Shown: one piece after another, positions 3,978 through 32,767 of the stretch | How the letters are laid out: each line of letters starts with the position of its first letter | Position numbering within the stretch: the stretch's first letter is position 1 | Source of the DNA: Octopus bimaculoides | Taxonomy: Eukaryota | Direction of reading: 5' to 3' | DNA: 32,767 nt | NCBI RefSeq assembly: GCF_001194135.2 | Contig: NC_068981.1 | Coordinates: forward strand, 71,860,701-71,893,467 | Notes under the pieces: generated by a model | The model's database searches: none | What the model was told of the DNA's origin: nothing | The model's input: the letters and a program-made list of their open reading frames with translations, nothing else | Translations under genes and position numbers: made by a program

Positions 3978-4205
3978 CATCATCATCATCATCATCATCA
4001 TTTAACGTCCGTTTTTATGCTGGCATGGGTTGGATGGTCTGACTAAGGTCTGGAGAACCAGTAGCTGCACCAAGCTCCAACCTGATCTGGCAGTGTTTCT
4101 ACAGCTGGATGCTCTTTCTAATGTCAATCACTCCAAGAGTGTAGCCGGTGTTTTTACGTGCCACTGGCACAGGAGCCAGTCAGGGGGTACTGGCATCGGC
4201 CATGT

Positions 4206-4367: not shown

Positions 4368-4754
4368 NNNNNNNNNNNNNNNNNNNNNNNNNNNNNNNNN
4401 NNNNNNNNNNNNNNNNNNNNNNNNNNNNNNNNNNNNNNNNNNNNNNNNNNNNNNNNNNNNNNNNNNNNNNNNNNNNNNNNNNNNNNNNNNNNNNNNNNNN
4501 NNNNNNNNNNNNNNNNNNNNNNNNNNNNNNNNNNNNNNNNNNNNNNNNNNNNNNNNNNNNNNNNNNNNNNNNNNNNNNNNNNNNNNNNNNNNNNNNNNNN
4601 NNNNNNNNNNNNNNNNNNNNNNNNNNNNNNNNNNNNNNNNNNNNNNNNNNNNNNNNNNNNNNNNNNNNNNNNNNNNNNNNNNNNNNNNNNNNNNNNNNNN
4701 NNNNNNNNNNNNNNNNNNNNNNNNNNNNNNNNNNNNNNNNNNNNNNNNNNNNNN
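4368..4754. other. assembly gap (387 N)
   Basis: Run of N; it generates the poly-X ORFs in the track. Confidence 1.
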
Positions 4755-6163: not shown

Positions 6164-7388
6164 CAGTGTGTCCCCAAAAATGTATATACACAGTGAATGT
6201 TTATGAAGTCAGCGTTTATTAAACTACATTTCATTTTCAAAATTTAATAGAATCTACTGACAGAATTATATTTTTTTCTGAATACCTCTTTTCAAACTGA
6301 TGACTGTGCTGGTTTGGGCACTGCTTATAATGTGAAGCAATAGAATTGCAAACATCAAGAAACATTTTGTTTGGTATTTGTGCACATTCTTCTTAAATGG
6401 TTGCCTTCAATTCATCAAGTGTCACTGGTTTTGTAGCATAAACCTTATTAAGTATCCCCACAAAAAAATGTCTAATGGTGTGTGGTCCAGTAAATGCCAA
6501 GGTTATTCTACTGAACCTCTTCATCCAATCCACCTGTTGGGCAAAATCTCATAAAAGTAAGTCTTTACATTACTAAGGTAGTGTAGGGGTGCCCTCTTGC
6601 TGGAGATAAAACTCCACATCTTCAAAGTCCTCTCGAATGCATGGCATAACAGTTTGTAGCAGCAAGTTCAAGTAAATGGGACCCGTCGTAGCTTCATCGA
6701 TAAAGTATGATCTAATTAATCCTTTTGATGATTAACCTCACCACACTCTAATGCCTGGTAAATTAACATGATATTCCTCTGTAATACGTGAATTCTTGGG
6801 TCCTCTGTAGGTGCAATTGTGGCTGCTAATTATGCCAGTTTATTTAAACGTAGTCTCTTCTCTCCAAATATTCCTCTTTTGGAAAGTATGCATCTTGTAC
6901 ACATCTTCAGTCTGGATCATCTTCATTGAGAGCATAGACTATTCTTGGAATGTGACTTTCCCAATGACAGTGCTTTCCAAATGTGATGGAGATTGATTTT
7001 GTAATTCCTATCTCATGACTCACTTGCTGCACTAATTTTCTTGAACTCTGGCAATATGTTTCTAGTACACTTTCTTGCTTTGTGGAGCTTGTCAACATCT
7101 GTGGCCTTCCAGAGCATTTCCTATCGACATTCTGAATAGTTCCATTTGCTTTAAACTTATCTGTAATTTAAGAGATGGAGTTATTTTGGACTTCTTTGAA
7201 ACTCTCTTCTAAATTGTCTTTGCCCTTTGACTGCATTTTCAAACTTCCAGTGGTACTTTAGGATAAATTTCCCCTGTTCAACGCTTAATCTGTCCCCTTT
7301 CATTATTTATAATAGGTTAAGTTTAAAAAGCAATGAAAGTTGAGTTATCATCTGTTAAAATGTGTATACATTTTTTGGAGACACCCTG
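6164..7388 (-). mobile_element. full-length inactive Tc1/mariner element, DD41D (rosa/Visitor) type, 1225 bp
   Basis: TA flanks at 6162-6163 and 7389-7390. About 28-bp TIRs cagtgtgtccccaaaaatgtatatacac / rc cagggtgtctccaaaaaatgtatacaca. The broken transposase from ATG 7303 down to about 6270 reads MKGDRLSVEQGKFILKYHWKFENAVKGQRQFRREF (DUF4817-like HTH), KFKANGTIQN..RKCSGRP, ALNEDDPD, WREETTFK (WSDE), FYLQQEG (QQDG), PNRWIG, DHTPLDIFLWGYL, KVYATKP, HQFE. There are 41 residues between the D2 position and the TPLD aspartate after repairing one frameshift. Confidence 0.9.
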
Positions 7389-7569: not shown

Positions 7570-8483
7570 CTGTAAAACAAAAATGTAGTGATGTCTTTTT
7601 GATTCTTCTATTTTATTACTTTTACCCACTCTTAGCATTGAGCACATAACATTTAGGAATACAGATTCACATTAGGATTTTAGCCTTTCTGTTTTTTATA
7701 TCATTCTAGGATAATTGGGAGGCTTTTTGTTCATGGATCATTGCCTTACTTCACTAGACATGATTTCTACTGCTAACTACTTGGCTGTCAATGGTAAACC
7801 TTGGTTAAGTAGATAAAGTGGATACTACTTGAAATGTCTTAACTCCAATAGTTGGATGATAGGAATGTCTTTTCTCACAGTTTAGGAAATGAATAAATAT
7901 GAGTATGATACAACAATAGCAGATATACAAGTATCTCAAACCCATAAATGAAATGTCTACACTTAAAATGTGCAAAATTCTTCTCAAAAGTTTGCTGGAA
8001 GCATTAAATAACTTTTGATATGTATTTGTGCTGTGAGTGAAGCAGAAAAAAAATATAGCATGGAAAAAATCTAATCCTTTTTGTATTTCTGTTGAGATAC
8101 ACTGCCTTTGTTGCAGTTAATTTTGGAAATTAGAAGAATTAAGCATAATAACTTATAGAATAGGACCAAGGGCTCTCTCAGGTAGATTGGTATCATAGGG
8201 GTTTAAACTAACATCTTTGTTAACCTCGATAAAATTGTTCTTTTACACAACTGTAAGTACATGCATGAGTGGTGTGATTCAATATGGAAATAAAACAGGC
8301 AGGGAAGTCAGAATATTTGGAAACAATTAACTCTTATCTGTGGATTTAATAGACAAAGAAATACAAACCAGTTGAGAAAACATTTGTGTATCAGATGATA
8401 ATTTTTGTATAGTAGTGTTGATTGAACATTGTTTACCTTGCAAGACACTGATAAAATGAATGAATTAGTCACAACTCCTAGCC

Positions 8484-9126
8484 ATGGAAACTGACTTGGC
8501 GATAAAGTTTTGTATTAAACTGGGTAAAAATGCTACAGAAACTTATGAAATGCTCCAGATTCCTTATGGATTAATTAGTATGAGCCAAGAATCTGTTTTT
8601 CATTGGCATAAGAGACCAGCCAAAGCAAGTCCACTAGGAAGCTCATGACAATCCCCTTTTTTAACAGTAAGGGCATAATATACATCCACTGGGTTCCCTC
8701 TTGTTGGACGGTCAATAAAAAGTATTTTGTGGAAGTTTTGAAGGTGTTCAGAAAGCGATTTCATTGTAAAAGGCCAGTACACCTGCATCAGGACAATGCA
8801 CCATTCCAGAATTCCATTCTGGTAACCAACCACTTGACAGAGATGGGCATCAAAATTGTCCATCCCCACTCCCTACAGTCCAGACCTTGCTTCTGGTGAC
8901 TTTTTGTTGTTCCCTAAGCTGAAGGAGATGAAGGAAGCTATGCCAAGAATCCTTGACACCTCTACTTTGGAGAACATCCATGGAGTCTTTACGAAGTGGT
9001 TGGAGCACTACAAATGTATTGAAGTCAGAGGATCCTACTTTGAAGGAAATTAGTGTTTTATACTTCTTTGAAATTAATAAACATTCTCTCATGAAAAAGT
9101 CTCAAAACTTCTGGAATGCACCTTGT
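8484..9126 (+). mobile_element. DD34D mariner transposase relic with internal deletions
   Basis: METDLAIKFCIKLGKNATETYEML...SVFHWHKR (mariner HTH) jumps straight to LMTIPFFNSKGIIYIHWVP..TVN..YF.EVL, HQDNAP, PYSPDLASGDFLLFPKLK, KCIEVRGSYFEGN*. D..D spacing is 34 after one 1-nt repair. The 3' end ...aaaacttctggaatgcaccttgt is TIR-like; no 5' TIR seen. Confidence 0.9.
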
Positions 9127-9696: not shown

Positions 9697-9884
9697 CCTT
9701 TACTTGTCTCAGTCATTGGACTGCAACCATGTTAGGGCACACCAACTTAAAGTAGATAGTTGAACAAATTGACCTCTCTATTTATTTTAAAGTTTAGTAC
9801 TTATTCTATCAGTCTGTTTTGCTGAACCACTAAGTTATAGGGACATAAAGAATCCAACACCAGTTGTCAAGCACTGGTGGGAGA

Positions 9885-9923
<39 letters not shown>

Positions 9924-9933
9924 NNNNNNNNNN

Positions 9934-11070: not shown

Positions 11071-11429
11071 TATCATGTCACCCATTTTAATACCAACTCC
11101 TGACTCATCTTAGGCTCACATCTAAAGAAAATCCAACTGGTACAATGTGGTTCACAAATATACTAGCCTGTAGCTATTACACATACTACTTTTTCCTTTT
11201 TGCTTTTTCTGTCACTGCTAAAATGAACTTTGTTCCTTGGAACTCATCAACCTTAGGTTACTTTAATTCAAGCACTTCCAACACCCTCATCTCTTCTCTA
11301 CTGACCATATACTTTATGCTGACTCCCACCAAGTTTCTCACTAATCATTATGTCCAGTTCTTTATTCCCAGGGCCACCTTCCGGGATCCCTTCTCTGCAC
11401 ATGCTTTTTATTCTGCAGCAGCAAACTTG

Positions 11430-12006
11430 GGATCTTTTTTAAAACGGGGGCCACATTTTTCATTAATGTTTTACGTAGTGTTTTTGGTACCGAAAGACTT
11501 TCAAACTTTGTATACTTATCTATTTTGTGTTATAGAACAGAAAAATATTTTTGTATTCGAATTTATTTCATGTAAAAAATTGTCTTATTTCGATAATTTC
11601 AACCAATCACTGACGTCCATTCAGCCGATATACATTAAGTGCCGACTACATAAACAAACGATTCTTCGTTTTATTTGCTTTTTTCATTTTAAATTTGCTT
11701 TAACCCTTACCCTAACCCTAACCCTAACCGTAGGGTTAGGGTTAGAGTTAGGGTTAGGGTTAGGGTTAATTGTTTCAGAATCGTTTGTTTATGTAGTCGG
11801 CACTTAATGTATATCGGCTGAATGGACGTCAGTGATTGGTTGAAATTACAGAAATACGACAACTTTAACATGGAATAATTTATGGATTTCTTTTTTTTTA
11901 AGAAGACTAAGAGAAAAAGATGTTTTATATGACACATTCTACCAGTGTTCCAAGTTTCAAAGTGTTTCGTTAATGAAAAATGTGGCCCCCGTTTTAAAAA
12001 AGATCC
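11430..12006. mobile_element. young non-autonomous DNA transposon (foldback MITE, 577 bp) with nested inverted repeats and a telomeric core
   Basis: Perfect 8-bp TSD CAAACTTG at 11422-11429 and 12007-12014. Perfect 37-bp TIR GGATCTTTTTTAAAACGGGGGCCACATTTTTCATTAA at 11430-11466 / 11970-12006. Perfect 72-bp inner IR at 11594-11665 / 11777-11848. Telomeric core at 11701-11768. No transposase ORF. Confidence 0.93.
11701..11768. repeat. interstitial telomeric repeat in divergent orientation: about 5 x TAACCC then 6 x TAGGGT
   Basis: taaccc ttaccc taaccc taaccc taacc g tagggt tagggt tagagt tagggt tagggt tagggt ta. Confidence 0.97.
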
Positions 12007-12768
12007 CAAACTTGCAACTGTCCAAATGGATTGTTAGCAGCACTAGTCTGAACAGTTATGCTGGGCCTGTGATGGTCATGTCAGCAATGAGCACATCTAC
12101 ATCTTCTACACTAAGTGAATTAGAAAGAAATGAACCAGACACTTGTAATTATAAACCAATTTGTTATAAAAATTTCAATCATTGTACAGTGACAATTAGA
12201 ACAACATGATTTCTTTCTAGTATTCAGTTCCTTTACTTTTAATTTTAGAGTTACAAGTCTGTCCGATATATAAATTATAAAAGCACATAATATTTTGCCT
12301 TCAATTTTATGCTAAATGACTCTATTGTAGATACATATATGTCATCTATAAGTCATTGCTTCAACTCACATATGACTAGATGTTTGTTTGATGGTGGATA
12401 TGTAATGTAAATACTCTTCTATATTAATTCATTTTAAACTACGACTATGCTACCTATATATACAAATAATAATACAAAATAGTTCAATTATTCATTTGCT
12501 GTAACAGTCCCAAATGTATAGTGTTTGGAATTATACTGAGTATTATGAATAGTAAAATTTATATATATTTGAATGCAAATAAACATTAAGCATTAAAAGC
12601 TAACTGTAAATTCATAGTTGTAATTTATTTATAAGGCTGGGATTTTCCTATCATGAATATTTTTTGGAAAAAAAATTACCACTCAATGACTTCACTTGAG
12701 AAATGCATGTGATTTGTTTTGTTGTTTTCCACTTGAATGTGTAGTATCACATGATCAGGAAGGAATAC

Positions 12769-14285: not shown

Positions 14286-14436
14286 CTGCAGTCGCTAAAT
14301 TCCCTTTGAGAATTATTCGGTCTTAGTAGATACATGATATGTGATCTTCTTCTAGCACATTAGCAGTCCACCTAGTGTCCTCCTTTATATATGTTTTTAT
14401 GTATTTATATATATGTATATATATATATACCTATGT

Positions 14437-14650
14437 CTGTGTCTCTTTATGTCTGTGTTTGTCCCCCACCACCACTTGACAACTGGTGCTGGTGCGTTTA
14501 CATCTATGTAACTTAGTGGTTCAGCAAAAGTGACCAATAGAATAAATGCCAAGCTTTAAAAAAAAAAAATAAGTACTAGGGTCGATACATCTGATGAAAA
14601 ATTTCTTCAAGGTGGTGTTTCAGCATGGCCGCAGTCTAATAACTGGAACA
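14437..14650 (+). mobile_element. SINE family A, 3' half
   Basis: gtttgtcccccaccaccacttgacaactggtgctgg...aacttagtggttcagcaaaa...aagtactagggtcgat...cagcatggccgcagtc. Confidence 0.8.
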
Positions 14651-20436: not shown

Positions 20437-22335
20437 CAGTGGTTCTCAACCTTTTTCAAAATTTTTGCTTTGTGGTCTCCTGGCTATTTTTTGGAGGCCT
20501 CACAGTCCCTGGCCTATTTTGGCAGGAACAAGAGATTAATCAAATGCAAAATTTTCATGATTATACTACTATTAGGTTTAAGTAGTTGAATGCACAAAAC
20601 CTCATGCCATTAAATATAAATGTTAGATGTAAGCATAAAATAACAATAATGGCACTAACATGACACCAGATGTTGGTAAAATGATATGAAAAAAATTAAC
20701 ATTTTGTTTCTTTTTAGGCTATGAAGTAGGGCCACAGTTAACTATACCAAACTTTAATTATTCATCAGTAATTTATGCTTTCAAACCCATTTTCACAAAT
20801 ATTAAGTTCGGAGGCAAGTAAGGTCCAGTATAAAAAAGGGACCATTGGCATTGATGTAGCATTTAATTCTTTGTTTATTTTCTTCAATTCTTTCCTTGAT
20901 TTGCATATATATTTGCCGAAAACCGATAGAAGACAAGATATTTTTTGATATACAAAGAAAAATCATTAAACCTGTTCAAAAGAAGGATTAATGTGACTGC
21001 TGTATTTGCTTTAGCTTTACCAACTTGTCTATATTTGGCTGGGTTCTGGATAAAGCAACCCTCATCTCGTGTGTAACATCCAGGCTGTTTCGTTGTTTGC
21101 TTTTTATTGATTGAAGAGCCGAAAACACTAACTTGCACTCATAAGTGGTTGTGAAGGGAACCAGATATTTCAGTGCCATCTTTGAAATATCTGGATAAAG
21201 CTGTGCTGTCTGAATCCAAAAGTCACAACAACTCATTTCACGAAAGATCTGTTTTGCAACTCCATTATTCAACAATTCTATGAACTGCTCCTGCACAGTT
21301 ATGTCCTCAGAAGGGAGATCAGCAAGTGATATGGAAAATGGATTGTTCATGCAGCAGTAAAGTTGCTCAAATTTTTGCAAATTGGGAAAATATCGGGATA
21401 ATTCTTCCCTAAGAATGCAAATATGGTTTTGCATCACCTCAACCATATCATCATTGACGAGGAACTCGTTTTCATCAATAAATTTATTAAACTGAGGGGG
21501 AAAGGTGTAAAGTTTTTCTTTTGCTATTTTGAAGCCCATAGTTCCAGTTTCATTTTAAAAGCAGATATTTTTTCATGACAGTGGAGTACTGTTGCGCCTT
21601 TTCCTTGCAGGGTTAAGTTAAGAGTGTTGAAAGAGTCGAATATATCCACCAAAAATACCAGATATATAAGAAATCAGGCATCACAAAATTTAGCTCACAA
21701 ACAAGGCTTTGAGTCCTGAACAAATTCACATATTTTGTTTCAAAGCAAAAAAACTCACATCAGTGCTTTCCCTTTAGATAACCATCGGATGCGAGAGTGC
21801 AACAGAAGACACGAGAATTTAGTGCCCCAGCTTTGATGAAGTTGACTACAGCAATAACATCATTCAGAACATTTTAAAGTGTATCTGGTAAAGTCTTAGC
21901 CATAAGAGCTTGTCGGTGAATTGTACAATGTTTCCCAAGAGCATTCAGGGCTTTTGTTTGACAAGTGTTTGAAAACCCGAGTGGCAACCTGGCATGACCG
22001 GAGCGGCATCAGTGCAGACACCGATACAGTGCTCCCAATTGATGTCATGTGCACGAAAGAAGTTGTCAACTTTGACGAAAATGTCTTTTGCTGTCGTTTT
22101 AGAGTGGAGAGATTCGCAAAACAGAAAATCGTCTTCATACACTTATTGTGAATATACCGTACAAAGACACACAGTTGAGCCATATTCGCAATATCCGTAG
22201 ATTCATCAAGTTGGATAGAAAAAAGTTGAACGTGTCATTTGAAAGGGAGATATGTTTCAGTTTTGAAAGCTTGCATTGGTTGAAAACATTTGAAATAATC
22301 ATTCTGCCACAAGGCATGCATGGTAAGGTCACACT
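20437..22335 (-). mobile_element. hAT Charlie/Buster (ZBED5/SCAND3-like) transposon, 5'-truncated and internally deleted
   Basis: Terminal CAGTGGTTCTCAACC at 20437, preceded by ATCTAGAA (NTCTAGAN). Minus-strand transposase pieces: KLKHISLSNDT, SIQLDESTDIANMAQLCVFVRYI, EDDFLFCESLHSKTTAKDIF, CIGVCTD, HRQALMAK, RWLSKGK, LQGKG, PFTTTYEC, RVALSRTQPNIDKLVKLKQIQQSH* (stop at 20988). The second TIR is not found. Confidence 0.92.
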
Positions 22336-22699
22336 CATGAGTGCACACATGCGTATACAGTGCACTGTATCAGCCATTATGTTGGCAATTTTGGTCATGT
22401 CATAGTTCAGCTCTGGTCATTGGGTTATGCAACAGCTATTTTACCTAGAAGCTGGAGAATAAGAGGGATCAAATGACCTTTGCTGAATTCATTCTGGTTT
22501 GCACCAGTATAGGTTTAAGCTAAATGATTTTCCAATCTATAATTTTTTATAGAAGTACAACCCCCCCCCCCCTCAAAAAACTTATGATGGTAGTTGAAGT
22601 TGTAGTCATTTCCACATTTAAATATATATAGCAATCATTTTTTGTGAAAGAAGTTAGTGTGAGCATGTTTGGTGAGAAAAAACCAGTATTAGTTAACAA

Positions 22700-24521: not shown

Positions 24522-24665
24522 CAGGCATAGGTAACCTCTTTTGAGAAGGGGGCCACATGAGACATTGCTCATTATGCAAGCTGCACTACTAAAAAAAATT
24601 TAAGGTAATTTTTCATTAGGCATGCCATTCAGAAAGTCTTGCAGGCCTCAGTTTGCTCACGACTG
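24522..24665. mobile_element. hAT MITE (144 bp)
   Basis: Ends caggcataggtaacct / agtttgctcacgactg (about 10/16 inverted match). The 8-bp flanks atctaaac / atttaaac match at 7/8. Subterminal gggccac / gcaggcc. Confidence 0.7.
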
Positions 24666-25799: not shown

Positions 25800-26930
25800 T
25801 GATGCTAGACAGGAAATAAGAAAATAGATTTATTCAGCATGAAAAAGAGGCTGAGAGCAAGAAGTTTAGTAATGTAGCAAAGAGAATGAGAGGTAGGAAC
25901 TATTCCAAATAGCTGAGCAGTGAGTTCATATGAACCAAAATTTAATTGACAATTGTGTCTGAAATGACAATTGTGTATTGTACGCAATGACTGAACAGTA
26001 AGGATCATGGAAGTATTATTCTGAGAAGTTATTAAAAACAAATCTTTGATAATGAAAATGACTAAATGAAAGTAGGGAAAAGCTGTTGGCTATCAAGCAT
26101 AGGTGTAGAGAATGTGAATGCATCGGTCTTTGTAGATATTATTCTAGTTAATCAAGTGGTTCTCAGAGCATTGGAATGAAATTACCATTGTAAACTGCTA
26201 CAAGAGCAAAGAAGATAGATGCACTGAAGGGGTGCAATTATAGTACATTAAACTGGAAAAGTAGTTGGAATAGGGTTAGAGAAACTGGAACAAGACAGAG
26301 TTAAATTATTTAAGTTACTGCTCGAATGTATGCAAGATCACACATGAAAAGCACCCATTATCTTCTCAGAGTAGTTGGTGTTAGGAAGGGCATCCAGCTA
26401 TAGAAACCATTCCAAATCAGACAGGAAACTAGTGCAGCCCTCTGGATTACCAGATCCAATCAAACCATCTAACCCATGCCAGCATGGAAAATGGATGTTA
26501 AATGATGGTGATGATGATGATGTTGTAGAACCACAATGCTCTCATTCTAGTGATCTTGACTAAACATAAATAACAATATAAGCCCTTTATTGATCAAGAG
26601 AAAACTTTTGATTGTGCTCCATATTCTGTATAGTTTGGTGGATACTTTTAGATTTAAGGTTAGATGTTCAAGATATAAAAGTGTTTTGTAAACAAAATAA
26701 TGGTTGAAAGCATGTTGTATAAAGAATTTAGAGTACAGGTTGCTGTTAATGAGGGCTCAGTTTTTAGTCCTATTTCATCTTATAATTCTTAAATCAATAA
26801 GGTTGGATTTAAAAACTAGGTGTTAATATGGATTTTAATATATTAATCATTTGATTTTCATATTAGAATCTTTCATAATACTGTTTAGAAAATGGTCATG
26901 CAATGGAATCTCTGACAGGAAATGAGGACT
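25800..26930 (+). mobile_element. old RTE-clade LINE relic (RT region), interrupted by a younger retroposon
   Basis: In order: ARQEIRK*IYSA..EAESKKFSNV, FQIAEQ..MNQN, WNEITIVNCYKSKED..NY..IKL, [insert], GRT..ALILV, FIDQEKTFDCAP, EFRVQVAVNEGSVFSP, RC*YGF*YINHLIFILES..FRKW. These match RTE motifs IVNCYKGKGD, GRSTTDAIF, FVDLEKAFDRVP, VGVHQGSVLSP and LLYADDL. Confidence 0.8.
26340..26524 (+). mobile_element. (ATG)n-tailed short retroposon, copy 2 (nested in the RTE relic)
   Basis: aaaagcacccatta...gttggtgttaggaagggcatccagctatagaaac...aacccatgccagcatggaaaatggatgttaaatgatggtgatgatgatg. Confidence 0.85.
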
Positions 26931-27983: not shown

Positions 27984-28215
27984 GTGTGTGTGCTTGTGTG
28001 TGTGTGTGCTTGTGTGTGTGTGTGCTTGTGTGTGTGTGTGCTTGTGTGTGTGTNNNNNNNNNNGCTTGTGTGTGTGTGTGCTTGTGTGTGTGTGTGTGTG
28101 TGTGAGAGAGAGTGTGTGTGCATGTGTGTGTATGTGTGTGTGCATTATTTGGGTATGCGTATGTATGTATATGTATACCCATATACATGCACACACAAGT
28201 ATATGTATATGTATA
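27984..28215. repeat. compound (TG)n satellite with a higher-order (GTGTGT..GCTT) unit of about 12-14 nt, 10-N gap, then (GA)/(TATG)
   Basis: tgtgtgtgtgctt repeated about 6 times around the gap at 28054-28063. Confidence 0.9.
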
Positions 28216-30057: not shown

Positions 30058-30321
30058 AGCACCATCTGAACATGGCTGATGCCAGACCCACCTTACTGGT
30101 GGCACGTAAAAGCATCATCCAAATGTGGTCAATGCCAGTCCCCTCTGGCCCCTGTGCCGGTGGCATGTAAAATCCACCCACTACACTCTTGGAGTGGTTG
30201 GCGTTAGGAAGGGCATCAAGCTGTAGAAACACTACCAGATCAGATTGGAGCCTGGTGCAGCCTCCTGGCTTGCCAGACCCCCAGTCAAACCATCCAGCAA
30301 TGATGAAGATGATGATAATGA
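30057..30321 (+). mobile_element. (ATG)n-tailed short retroposon, copy 3
   Basis: Two tandem 5' units (..atggctgatgccag..ggtggcacgtaaaagcatc / ..gtggtcaatgccag..ggtggcatgtaaaatccac), then ggttggcgttaggaagggcatcaagctgtagaaac and a gatgat tail. Confidence 0.85.
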
Positions 30322-30406: not shown

Positions 30407-30445
30407 NNNNNNNNNNAACACACACACACACACACACACACACAT
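30325..30445. repeat. compound TA/TG/CA microsatellite with a 10-N gap (30407-30416)
   Basis: Direct reading. Confidence 0.93.
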
Positions 30446-30461
30446 ATTTATATGAATGATA

Positions 30462-30789
30462 ACACAAATGGGTTGCAGTTCACTACAGCCGTTTCAGATG
30501 TGTTCTTTATTGACGAACAAAATTGTTTCATCATGCAAAAAACAAAAACAAAACAAAAAAAAACATTTTCATCAAGTGAAGACTGGTAAGAATTAACAAC
30601 AAGAACTCTCCTATCGAAATCAGTCCAGTCAAGTCATCTGGCACTATGTTCGGTTTGTGAGAAGTTCCTATTGTTAATTCTTACCTGTACACATCTGATG
30701 AAAACAAGATTTTTGCATGGTGTAACAGTTTTGTTCATCAATAAAGAACATGTCTGAAACAGCTGTAGTTAACTGCAACCCATCTATGT
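30462..30789. mobile_element. foldback MITE (about 330 bp) with about 140-150-bp imperfect TIRs
   Basis: Left arm acacaaatgggttgcagttcactacagccgtttcagatgtgttctttattgacgaacaaaattgtttcatcatgcaaaaa vs rc of right arm acatagatgggttgcagttaactacagctgtttcagacatgttctttattgatgaacaaaactgttacaccatgcaaaaa (about 10 mismatches in 80 nt). The match continues to ggtaagaattaacaa..gaac. TA on both sides (30460-30461, 30790-30791); spacer of about 48 nt. Confidence 0.85.
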
Positions 30790-31532
30790 TATTTATTCTT
30801 CATCTAACTTGGAACCTTCCATACATTTGGATCTGGAGTCTATAGTTGACATGAAATATATGCAGTGGGTGTACTCCTGTATGACTTTGATAACACATGT
30901 ATTCAGTCTATTACTTGTGAATGTATGCATAACTGGAAGAACAAATCTGTATTTACTTTAGTAAGTATGTATATGTCAGTATATATTGTTGGTATACAGG
31001 TGTGCTATCTCCAACTCTACCCTGGTGCTTTTACTTTTTAAATACCTGATATTTTCAAATCCTGAAAAGTTACACACACACACACACATATTCATGCATT
31101 TATGTATAAATTTCATTGTACTTTTGACTAAAATACTTAACCCTTAGAACTTATTCAATCAAAAAGTTGAATAATTAAAATAGCTCTTGAATAATTAAAA
31201 TGACTCTTCTAAAATAAACCATAATAAAGACACAATTATTGCTATCAAATTTCCCACGGCTAAAACATTTCTTTTTATTCATTAATCTATAATAGAAAAG
31301 CAAAGCACATGGATGGACAGCTTTTAAGTTTAATGTTGTTAATAAGGTTCAGGTAGTGCTAAGAATGAATGATAATCGTAACTAAGACAAAAGAATTCTA
31401 ATTTCTTTGTTATATTTTATTAAGTGTCTCACATTTCTGATTTGAAATCCTCTTGGAACAAATTAAAATTCACTATAATTCTCTCTGATTAAATATATTT
31501 TTCTCAAAAGATATCTTAAATTTTAAAGAGTT

Positions 31533-32313: not shown

Positions 32314-32428
32314 TGTATGTATGTATGTATGTATGTATGTATGTATGTATGTACGTATGTGCATACGTATGTATGTATGTATGTATATTATAAATATGTG
32401 TATATATATGAATATTTATATATATATC
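32314..32428. repeat. (TATG)n + (TA)n microsatellite
   Basis: Direct reading. Confidence 0.95.
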
Positions 32429-32432
32429 ATTC

Positions 32433-32767
32433 CAGGGTGAAAAACTAGAGGTAGTCGATAGCTTCCGCTATCTGGGCGACCAAGTTAGTAGTGGGGGTGG
32501 GTGCGCTGAAAGTGTAGCTGCTAGAATAAGAATAGCCTGGGCAAAGTTTAGAGAGCTCTTACCCCTGCTGGCGACAAAGGGACTCTCACTCAGAGTAAAA
32601 GTCAGACTGTATGACGCATGCGTACGAACAACCATGCTACATGGCAGTGAAACATGGGCTGTAACTGCTGAGGACATACGTAAGCTCGCAAGGAATGAAG
32701 CCAGTATGCTCCGTTGGATGTGTAATGTCAATGTGAATACCCGTCAGAGTGTAAGTATCTTGAGAGA
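32433..32767 (+). mobile_element. young 5'-truncated RTE-clade LINE (ORF region just C-terminal to RT), runs off the window
   Basis: 111 uninterrupted codons: QGEKLEVVDSFRYLGDQVSSGGGCAESVAARIRIAWAKFRELLPLLATKGLSLRVKVRLYDACVRTTMLHGSETWAVTAEDIRKLARNEASMLRWMCNVNVNTRQSVSILR. The F.YLG, RI..AW..F, Y...V...MLHGSETW and MLRWM motifs are typical of RTE. Confidence 0.92.

What the first reader, a model, noticed from the sequence alone, without database searches (positions are those of the whole stretch)
11430..12006. Very young transposon built from three nested inverted repeats around a telomeric core
Seen: TSD - 37-bp perfect TIR - spacer - 72-bp perfect inner IR (imperfect out to about 11559/11880) - AT spacer - (CCCTAA)~5/(TTAGGG)6 - inner IR - spacer - TIR - TSD. 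There are no mismatches in the TIR, inner IR or TSD, and CpGs are intact, while the neighbouring elements are heavily decayed. Inference: this is a recently or currently active non-autonomous family that spreads telomeric repeats to interstitial sites and can fold into a long hairpin or cruciform. Telomere-like repeats inside transposons are known in other taxa (e.g. ciliate TBE elements), but I do not recognise this element as a described family.
Basis: partly seen in the sequence, partly recalled or inferred. Interest (0 to 1): 0.85.

Follow-up and report, generated by a model that had tools for sequence, protein, structure and literature searches.

The report
Young palindromic transposon carrying telomere repeats
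A 577-base non-coding "cut-and-paste" transposon, probably of the Merlin type, inserted recently into this (probably octopus) genome; the telomere-type repeats at its centre are an unusual passenger, but nothing here shows it is more than an ordinary mobile element.

Summary
There are 8-bp direct repeats (CAAACTTG), 37/37-bp terminal inverted repeats and a 72/72-bp perfect inner inverted repeat. At the centre is (TAACCC)4.8 | (TAGGGT)6.3. The element has 18 CpGs (observed/expected 1.19) in a window at 0.22.

It is not really "three nested repeats". The whole 577 bp is one old, degenerate palindrome (about 70% self-complementary). Two blocks have stayed perfect while the segments between them diverged.

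A TIR starting 5'-GG, 37 bp long, with an 8-bp duplication fits the published Merlin superfamily signature. It fails the hAT terminus rule. The repeated elements in the window look like octopus SINEs (from memory), and Merlin is reported to be abundant in Octopus bimaculoides.

The telomeric tract is oriented CCCTAA then TTAGGG, the opposite of a telomere fusion. It is best explained as the axis of an inverted duplication of a half-element.

Recent insertion is well supported. Copy number, current activity and "spreading telomeric repeats" could not be tested: no second copy is in the window, and no accessible database holds this genome. Repbase and Dfam could not be searched, so whether the family is already catalogued is unknown.

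Verdict: a young member of a known kind with odd cargo; moderate interest.

The parts
11422..11429 (.). Left copy of the 8-bp target-site duplication, CAAACTTG
   Evidence: Exact direct repeat with 12007-12014 (D14).
11430..11466 (+). Left terminal inverted repeat, 37 bp, starting 5'-GG
   Evidence: 37/37 complementary to 11970-12006. Its first 25 bases occur only at the two ends of the element in the window; 0 matches in shuffles.
11467..11575 (+). Left subterminal segment, diverged from its partner on the right arm
   Evidence: 61 matches over 134 alignment columns, 56 of them gaps. It is still significantly homologous to the reverse complement of 11867-11969: local score 21 against 9.4 +/- 1.6, 0 of 1000 shuffles.
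11576..11665 (+). Left arm of the inner inverted repeat. The perfect 72-bp box is 11594-11665 and carries CCAAT (11603), TGACGTC (11611) and TATA (11629), all facing the centre
   Evidence: 90 nt at 96%, inner 72/72 perfect. The ordered motif pattern occurs only here and on the other arm in the window; 0.03 expected. The pattern was chosen after seeing the sequence.
11666..11700 (+). Left AT-rich spacer with T-runs. It has no counterpart of equal length on the right arm
   Evidence: 9 matches over 36 columns against the right arm; sequence.
11701..11729 (+). C-strand telomere-type repeats, (TAACCC)4.8, with one variant unit (CCCTTA)
   Evidence: Tandem Repeats Finder: period 6, 4.8 copies, 91% matches.
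11731..11768 (+). G-strand telomere-type repeats, (TAGGGT)6.3, with one variant unit (TTAGAG). The palindrome axis lies at about 11730-11736
   Evidence: Tandem Repeats Finder: period 6, 6.3 copies, 93% matches; inverted-repeat pairs I3-I9.
11769..11776 (+). Short right spacer (ATTGTTTC)
   Evidence: Sequence; arm asymmetry.
11777..11866 (-). Right arm of the inner inverted repeat; the perfect 72-bp box is 11777-11848
   Evidence: (I1).
11867..11969 (-). Right subterminal segment, diverged from the left one
11970..12006 (-). Right terminal inverted repeat, 37 bp
12007..12014 (.). Right copy of the 8-bp target-site duplication, CAAACTTG
   Evidence: D14.

Best explanation
This is a recent insertion of a 577-bp non-autonomous cut-and-paste DNA transposon (a MITE-like element). 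It most likely belongs to the Merlin superfamily.

**Transposition (inferred).** A transposase encoded elsewhere in the genome binds the two identical 37-bp ends. For Merlin this would be a DDE_Tnp_IS1595-type enzyme. It excises the element and inserts it at a staggered 8-bp cut, and repair of that cut produced the CAAACTTG duplication.

**Origin of the body.** The body is shown to be an old palindrome. The inferred origin is an inverted duplication of one half-element: TIR, subterminal region, 72-bp box, spacer, (CCCTAA)n. The axis of that duplication fell inside a telomere-type hexamer tract. That by itself yields the head-to-head (CCCTAA)n(TTAGGG)n centre, so the telomeric repeats are most likely passengers rather than a relic of chromosome ends.

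**Later divergence.** The arms diverged afterwards, except for the TIRs and the 72-bp boxes. The inferred reason is that these blocks are needed for mobilisation (transposase binding or pairing), or are kept identical by conversion within the hairpin.

**Confidence by step.**
- Real transposon insertion: about 0.85.
- Young insertion: about 0.8.
- Merlin rather than another superfamily with an 8-bp TSD: about 0.5.
- Telomeric tract is a passive passenger: about 0.6.
For: - **Anatomy.** Perfect 8-bp TSD, 37/37 TIR and 72/72 inner box. The first 25 bases of the TIR occur only at the two ends of the element in the window, with none in shuffles.
- **Non-coding.** The ORFs across it have no Pfam match and no homologues.
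- **One palindrome.** It aligns to its own reverse complement along its full length. The subterminal arms are still significantly homologous at about 71% identity. The block pattern is 37/37, 61/134, 14/18, 72/72, 9/36, 27/32.
- **Merlin criteria, as quoted in PMC8101967.** TIRs of 24-462 bp with a conserved terminal 5'-GG-3', and 8- or 9-bp TSDs. All three are met.
- **Merlin in octopus.** The same paper reports that Merlin is unusually abundant in Octopus bimaculoides, with 191 sequences. PMC13282606 lists recently active Merlin and MITE families in O. vulgaris.
- **Youth.** No substitution in 234 paired or duplicated bases, an upper bound of about 1.3% divergence. CpG observed/expected is 1.19 against 0.22 for the window. 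SINE-like copies nearby differ from each other at TG/CA sites typical of CpG decay.
- **Not an artefact.** The two arms are clearly different sequences, and no N-run is nearer than 9933.
Against: - Only one copy is visible. No relative and no autonomous partner could be retrieved, so mobility as a family is inferred from anatomy alone.
- GG plus an 8-bp TSD is a thin diagnostic. Mutator-like and other superfamilies with roughly 8-bp TSDs cannot be excluded without the transposase.
- The 14 bp outside each TIR are also partly complementary (10/14; the arms extend to 51 nt at 92%, I2). They begin CAG...CTG, which could mean the real ends lie further out. The 8-bp direct repeat is itself 6/8 palindromic, so only its two central bases tell a direct repeat from an inverted one.
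- The octopus origin of the window rests on my memory of octopus SINE sequences. It was not tested.
- A passive-passenger reading does not explain why exactly a 72-bp, promoter-like box stays perfect.
Confidence: 0.6

Rival explanations
1. It is the same kind of element (a young non-autonomous cut-and-paste transposon) but from another superfamily that makes roughly 8-bp duplications: hAT, Mutator-like, P, or Zisupton/Novosib.
For: - An 8-bp TSD is the classic hAT and P length (established knowledge).
- The window holds a decayed hAT transposase at 20988-22400.
- PMC13282606 lists many recently active hAT and Mutator families in O. vulgaris.
Against: - The terminus GGATC does not fit the hAT consensus YARNG or the P consensus CANRG (my knowledge of those families; sequence).
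- The TSD CAAACTTG does not fit the weak hAT target preference nTnnnnAn.
- Mutator-like elements usually make 9-10-bp duplications.
- The hAT relic in the window has no sequence link to this element.
Confidence: 0.22
2. The real ends are the outer CAG (11416) and CTG (12020), a hAT-like terminus. On this reading CAAACTTG is part of an imperfect 51-bp TIR and not a target duplication. The element would then be older, with its inner blocks kept identical by conversion within the palindrome.
For: - The arms extend to 11416-11466 / 11970-12020, 51 nt at 92% (I2).
- The outer 14 bp match 10/14. I estimate chance at about 0.002 from simple binomials.
- The grammar CAG...CAAACTT...GGGCCACAT resembles hAT-type MITE ends as I remember them. 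That is a lead from memory, not a test.
- A similar end-like relic, CAGGCATAGGTAACCTCTTTTGAGAAGGGGGCCACAT, lies at 24522-24558.
Against: - Identity drops abruptly from 37/37 to 10/14 exactly at 11430/12006.
- No duplication flanks the outer ends (TTATTCTG against TCCAAATG).
- An old element should have lost CpGs as its surroundings have.
- Palindromic target sites are common for dimeric transposases.
- The relic match is not significant (E about 0.2) and has no partner.
Confidence: 0.07
3. The inner module is functional cargo. On this reading the two perfect 72-bp boxes are inward-facing promoters (CCAAT, CRE-like TGACGTC, TATA). They would transcribe across the telomeric palindrome and give a hairpin RNA made of telomere repeats. 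Alternatively, each arm derives from the 5' region of the telomerase RNA gene or its cDNA, as in TERC-flanked interstitial telomeric sequences.
For: - The motif order CCAAT-TGACG-TATA occurs only in the two boxes in the window (2 found, 0.03 expected).
- The perfect block spans roughly -65 to +5 of the start site that the TATA predicts (my reading).
- The box is an island of perfect conservation between diverged segments.
- The inner 326 nt fold as RNA at -202 kcal/mol, z = -26.
- TERC-flanked telomeric insertions exist in vertebrates (PMC8537989, listed).
Against: - The motifs were picked after seeing the sequence.
- There is no expression data.
- Rfam gives only far sub-threshold hairpin hits and no telomerase RNA match.
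- Telomerase RNA templates are 8-11 nt, not 5-6 repeats (PMC8480181).
- That paper's text and supplement name no cephalopod telomerase RNA and print no sequences, so the idea cannot be tested here.
Confidence: 0.07
4. The centre of the element is an assembly artefact. In a canonical k-mer graph (CCCTAA)n and (TTAGGG)n are the same nodes. A short-read assembler could therefore have collapsed a longer internal region, or mis-set the repeat number, between the two telomeric tracts.
For: - The window comes from a gapped draft assembly, with N-runs at 4368-4754, 9924-9933, 28054-28063 and 30407-30416.
- Palindromes and telomere-type repeats are known trouble spots for assemblers (established knowledge).
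Against: - The arms are different sequences, with 35-nt against 8-nt spacers, 4.8 against 6.3 units, and different variant units. This is not a read folded back on itself.
- Matching TSDs tie both ends to a single insertion.
- The telomeric tract is only 68 bp, which ordinary reads can span.
- There is no N-run within 1.5 kb.
Confidence: 0.05

Closest known systems
Merlin superfamily DNA transposons and their non-autonomous derivatives (Feschotte 2004, as summarised in PMC8101967; for example Merlin1_HS, listed in PMC5753468)
   Same: TIR begins 5'-GG. TIR length (37 bp) lies within the 24-462 bp range. The TSD is 8 bp. The likely host lineage (octopus) is reported to be rich in Merlin.
   Different: No DDE_Tnp_IS1595 transposase partner was found or could be looked for. 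I found no report of Merlin elements with a telomere-repeat palindrome at the centre.
hAT-superfamily MITEs
   Same: 8-bp TSD; small, non-coding, TIR-bounded; hAT relics are present in the same window.
   Different: The terminus GGATC does not fit YARNG. The 37-bp perfect TIR is longer than typical hAT TIRs. The TSD does not fit nTnnnnAn.
Palindromic / foldback-type MITEs, and the tandem-repeat-bearing MITEs described in molluscs (pearl, DTC84; recalled from memory)
   Same: The whole element is self-complementary and folds into one long hairpin. It carries a short tandem-repeat tract internally.
   Different: The arms are not built of subrepeats as in Foldback elements. The internal repeat is the telomere hexamer in mirror orientation, not a satellite or an ordinary microsatellite.
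Ciliate telomere-bearing transposons
   Same: A DNA transposon associated with the host's telomere repeat.
   Different: In those elements the telomere repeats sit at the termini. Here they sit at the axis, 270 bp from either end.
Interstitial telomeric sequences: fusion type (human 2q13) and repair- or telomerase-inserted type, including TERC-flanked ones (PMC8537989)
   Same: A short TTAGGG-type tract at a non-terminal site. Fusion-type sites also contain two arrays in opposite orientation.
   Different: Fusion junctions read (TTAGGG)n(CCCTAA)n. This element reads (CCCTAA)n(TTAGGG)n. The tract lies inside a TIR/TSD-bounded element, so it arrived by transposition and not by break repair at this site.

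Membership tests
Merlin superfamily (non-autonomous member) | TIRs with a conserved terminal 5'-GG-3' | tested here: met
   Both ends read GGATC.... The criterion is quoted from PMC8101967.
Merlin superfamily (non-autonomous member) | Target-site duplication of 8 or 9 bp | tested here: met
   CAAACTTG x2, 8 bp (D14). Caveat: the repeat is itself 6/8 palindromic.
Merlin superfamily (non-autonomous member) | TIR length 24-462 bp | tested here: met
   37 bp perfect.
Merlin superfamily (non-autonomous member) | Shares its termini with an autonomous element that encodes a DDE_Tnp_IS1595 transposase | not testable with these tools
   The TIR occurs only at the element's own ends in the window. The source genome is in none of the searchable collections.
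hAT superfamily | 8-bp TSD | tested here: met
hAT superfamily | TIR terminus (T/C)A(A/G)NG | tested here: not met
   The terminus is GGATC. The consensus is from established knowledge of hAT elements. It would be met only if the ends were moved out to CAGCA at 11416, where no TSD exists.
MITE (generic) | Short (under about 800 bp), non-coding, with TIRs and a TSD | tested here: met
   577 bp. The ORFs have no Pfam match and no homologues. TIR and TSD.
MITE (generic) | A multi-copy family with independent insertions | not testable with these tools
   One copy in 32.8 kb. There is no access to the rest of the genome.
Telomere-telomere fusion relic | Head-to-head arrays reading 5'-(TTAGGG)n(CCCTAA)n-3' | tested here: not met
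   The order here is (TAACCC)4.8 then (TAGGGT)6.3.
Telomere-bearing transposons of ciliates (TBE/Tel-1 type) | Telomere repeats at the element's termini | tested here: not met
   The termini are GGATCTTTT.... The repeats lie at 11701-11768, at the centre.
TERC-flanked interstitial telomeric sequence | The sequence next to the repeats derives from the telomerase RNA upstream of its template | not testable with these tools
   No cephalopod telomerase RNA sequence is available (PMC8480181). Rfam gives no telomerase RNA match.

The most novel reading that the evidence does not exclude
The element belongs to an active Merlin-type MITE family. Its two perfectly conserved 72-bp boxes are inward-facing promoters that transcribe a telomere-repeat hairpin. 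Each new insertion would then plant, at an interstitial site, a telomere-repeat (potential telomere-protein-binding and G-quadruplex-forming) palindrome together with a source of telomeric double-stranded RNA.
Probability: 0.07. Interest if true: 0.7.

Novelty: new member of a known kind. Interest (0 to 1): 0.35.

Why it matters
If the family proves to be multi-copy, it would be a concrete mechanism that scatters short telomere-type tracts through a cephalopod genome. Such tracts are potential fragile sites, G-quadruplex formers and protein-binding sites, and they are usually read as scars of chromosome rearrangement. That would affect how interstitial telomeric signals are interpreted in mollusc karyotype evolution. 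It would also flag a currently mobile DNA transposon in a lineage where mainly retroelements have been discussed as active. As a single copy with no demonstrated function it remains a curiosity: a well-preserved example of how a palindromic MITE keeps its ends and one internal box intact while the rest decays.

Tried and rejected
**Searches for relatives. All came back empty.**
- Exact-pattern scans with the TIR and with the 72-bp box found nothing in metagenome contigs or prokaryotic genome contigs.
- In viral contigs, the TIR 16-mer gave 4 hits that do not extend beyond the 16-mer (20-24 of 37 positions), so they are chance matches.
- I translated the element's ORFs to fish for other copies among predicted proteins. 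There were no hits and no exact-match contigs.

**Attempts to identify the organism. Failed.**
- The hAT ORF gave one weak JGI hit and no contig.
- The octopus assignment therefore rests on my memory of octopus SINEs.

**RNA gene. Rejected.**
- Rfam found nothing at gathering thresholds.
- A permissive scan gave only sub-threshold hairpin and miRNA-like hits on the telomeric palindrome.

**Nested insertion into an older palindromic element. Rejected.**
- The flanks beyond +/-14 bp show no complementarity above shuffles.

**TIR-like relic at 24522-24558.**
- No partner was found and the match is not significant.

**Telomere fusion or chromosome healing as the origin of the core. Rejected.**
- The orientation is wrong. 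Telomerase adds TTAGGG to 3' ends, which would give TTAGGG then CCCTAA.

**Capture of the telomerase RNA gene. Untestable.**
- No cephalopod telomerase RNA is named in PMC8480181, and the paper and its supplement print no sequences.

**Literature searches for DNA transposons carrying internal telomere repeats.**
- No matching description was found.
- Feschotte 2004 itself is not held in the library.

Full report
**1.

Reading 11300-12150 and comparing the element with its own reverse complement shows a perfect 37-bp terminal inverted repeat. It reads GGATCTTTTTTAAAACGGGGGCCACATTTTTCATTAA and lies at 11430-11466 / 11970-12006. It is flanked by an exact 8-bp direct repeat, CAAACTTG, at 11422-11429 and 12007-12014 (D14). 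The first 25 bases of the TIR occur nowhere else in the window and never in 100 shuffles.

The inner inverted repeat has arms at 11576-11665 and 11777-11866 (90 nt, 96%). Its inner 72 nt are perfect. Tandem Repeats Finder reports (TAACCC)4.8 at 11701-11729 and (TAGGGT)6.3 at 11731-11768.

The element has 18 CpGs, observed/expected 1.19. The window is at 0.22 and the immediate flanks at 0.15-0.16. As single-stranded DNA it folds into one long hairpin at -182 kcal/mol, z = -29.

**2. It is one old palindrome, not three nested repeats.**

The whole 577 bp aligns to its reverse complement at 69.8% over 610 columns. Broken down by block:

| Block | Matches / columns |
|---|---|
| TIR | 37/37 |
| Subterminal segment | 61/134 (56 gap columns) |
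| Outer part of inner repeat | 14/18 |
| Inner box | 72/72 |
| Spacer | 9/36 |
| Telomeric tract | 27/32 |

The diverged subterminal segments are still significantly homologous: about 71% identity, local score 21 against 9.4 +/- 1.6, 0 of 1000 shuffles. The two halves therefore descend from one sequence and have had time to diverge. Two blocks, the TIR and the 72-bp box, have stayed identical. The telomeric arms also differ, in unit number and in one variant unit each.

I infer that the family began as an inverted duplication of a half-element whose axis fell inside a telomere-type hexamer tract. I also infer that the TIRs and the box are either needed for mobilisation or are kept identical by conversion within the hairpin.

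**3. Orientation of the core.**

The tract reads 5'-(CCCTAA)n(TTAGGG)n-3'. Chromosome ends run 5'-TTAGGG-3' outward, so a telomere-telomere junction, or two telomerase-healed ends rejoined, would read (TTAGGG)n(CCCTAA)n. This is established knowledge. The core is therefore not a fusion or healing relic. It is what an inverted duplication of "...box-spacer-(CCCTAA)n" produces.

TTAGGG is the only experimentally determined cephalopod telomere motif, according to PMC13218726.

**4. What kind of transposon.**

The element is non-coding. The two chance ORFs that cross it have no Pfam match and no homologues.

An 8-bp duplication narrows the superfamily. PMC8101967 summarises Merlin as having TIRs of 24-462 bp with a conserved terminal 5'-GG-3' and 8- or 9-bp TSDs. 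All three criteria are met. The hAT terminus rule (YARNG, from my knowledge) is not met by GGATC.

The same paper singles out Octopus bimaculoides as unusually rich in Merlin, with 191 sequences. A 2026 O. vulgaris repeat annotation lists recently active Merlin, hAT, Mutator and MITE families.

The window is a eukaryotic draft assembly: 32.6% GC, many microsatellites and four N-runs. Its repeated SINE-like elements match my memory of octopus SINEs. That identification is a recollection, not a test. The protein collections evidently lack this genome.

**5. A caveat on the boundaries.**

The 14 bp outside each TIR are also partly complementary: CAGCAGCAAACTTG against CAAACTTGCAACTG. The arms extend to 51 nt at 92% (I2). 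The "TSD" is itself 6/8 palindromic.

There are two possible readings. Either the target site is a palindrome, which is common for dimeric transposases. Or the true ends are the outer CAG/CTG.
- Identity drops sharply from 37/37 to 10/14 at 11430/12006.
- No duplication flanks the outer ends (TTATTCTG against TCCAAATG).
- The flanks further out are not complementary.

Other copies would settle this.

**6. Age.**

No substitution has hit the 2x37 + 2x72 + 2x8 = 234 paired or duplicated bases. That bounds post-insertion divergence at roughly 1.3%. The bound is tighter still because 12 of the CpG dinucleotides lie in those blocks.

The neighbours are decayed:
- a frameshifted hAT transposase at 20988-22400;
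- a mariner relic at 8469-9050;
- SINE-like copies at 77-86% identity whose differences are TG/CA sites typical of CpG decay.

Recent insertion is therefore well supported. Current activity is not shown.

**7. The 72-bp box.**

On each arm the box carries CCAAT, then TGACGTC, then TATA, all pointing towards the centre. This ordered pattern occurs only there in the window (2 found, 0.03 expected). The perfect block spans about -65 to +5 of the start site that the TATA predicts.

This could be the promoter end of an autonomous parent, copied into both arms by the duplication. More speculatively, the boxes could be a pair of convergent promoters that transcribe the telomeric hairpin; the inner 326 nt fold as RNA at -202 kcal/mol. 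The motifs were chosen after seeing the sequence, and there is no expression evidence. I give the functional reading about 7%.

The idea that each arm derives from the telomerase RNA 5' region could not be tested. The telomerase RNA paper checked (PMC8480181) names no cephalopod and prints no sequences, and Rfam gives no telomerase match.

**8. Artefact?**

The arms are distinct sequences, and the matching TSDs tie them to one insertion. A folded-back read or a false join is therefore unlikely. Only the length of the centre is open to doubt in a short-read assembly, because C-strand and G-strand telomere k-mers are the same graph nodes. Long reads would settle it.

**9. What could not be done.**

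No second copy is in the window. None of the accessible collections holds relatives. Copy number, family boundaries, the transposase partner, insertion polymorphism and catalogue status (Repbase, Dfam) are all open. Literature searches found no description of a DNA transposon with a central telomere-repeat palindrome. That is weak evidence for novelty.

**10. Verdict.**

This is a real, young, palindromic non-autonomous DNA transposon, probably Merlin-type, with telomere-type repeats at its axis as probable passengers. It is a new member of a known kind unless already catalogued. The claims that would make it remarkable (an active family, dispersal of telomeric sites, a function for the core) are untested. 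The core's orientation argues against any link to chromosome ends.

Noticed in passing
window 11410-11429 and 12007-12026: The reconstructed empty site, CAGCAGCAAACTTGCAACTG, is itself a 14/20 palindrome centred on the 8-bp duplication. This suggests a symmetric target preference, or else casts doubt on the exact element ends.
   Followed up: partly
window 20988-22400 (- strand): Decayed hAT transposase. A 183-aa ORF has a Dimer_Tnp_hAT match (E = 2e-8). The upstream fragments are in other reading frames, so the gene is frameshifted. It is unrelated in sequence to the finding.
   Followed up: partly
window 8469-9050 (+ strand); also 6396-7167 (- strand): Decayed mariner-type transposase, with weak Transposase_1 and HTH_48 matches. 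The 6396-7167 pieces look Tc1/mariner-like by eye, but the three scanned against Pfam gave no match.
   Followed up: partly
window 9772-9912 and 14434-14574 (inverted, 77%); 4064-4155, 26347-26457, 30170-30280: Two families of SINE-like repeats, each next to AC/TA/TATG microsatellites. From memory they look like octopus SINEs. The copies differ from each other at TG/CA sites typical of CpG decay.
   Followed up: partly
window 30459-30792: A second hairpin-type element: 83-nt arms, 88% complementary, 168 nt apart, with ends reading GGGTTGCAG.../...CTGCAACCC. No clear target duplication. Possibly an older MITE whose ends also start GG.
   Followed up: no
window 24522-24558: CAGGCATAGGTAACCTCTTTTGAGAAGGGGGCCACAT resembles the finding's TIR (19/23 over ...CTTTT..GGGGGCCACAT). 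It has no inverted partner in the window and the match is not significant.
   Followed up: yes
window 32412-32765 (+ strand): An open frame running off the window end reads like the C-terminal part of a LINE reverse transcriptase (...VDSFRYLG...). It has no Pfam match at E <= 0.01.
   Followed up: no
window 4368-4754, 9924-9933, 28054-28063, 30407-30416: Runs of N: one of 387 and three of exactly 10, the short ones inside dinucleotide microsatellites. The window therefore comes from a gapped draft assembly.
   Followed up: yes
window 11701-11768: Each strand of the telomeric palindrome has at least four GGG runs, so each could form an intramolecular G-quadruplex on either side of the axis. Rfam's permissive scan returns sub-threshold miRNA-precursor-like hits on this 67-nt hairpin.
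   Followed up: partly
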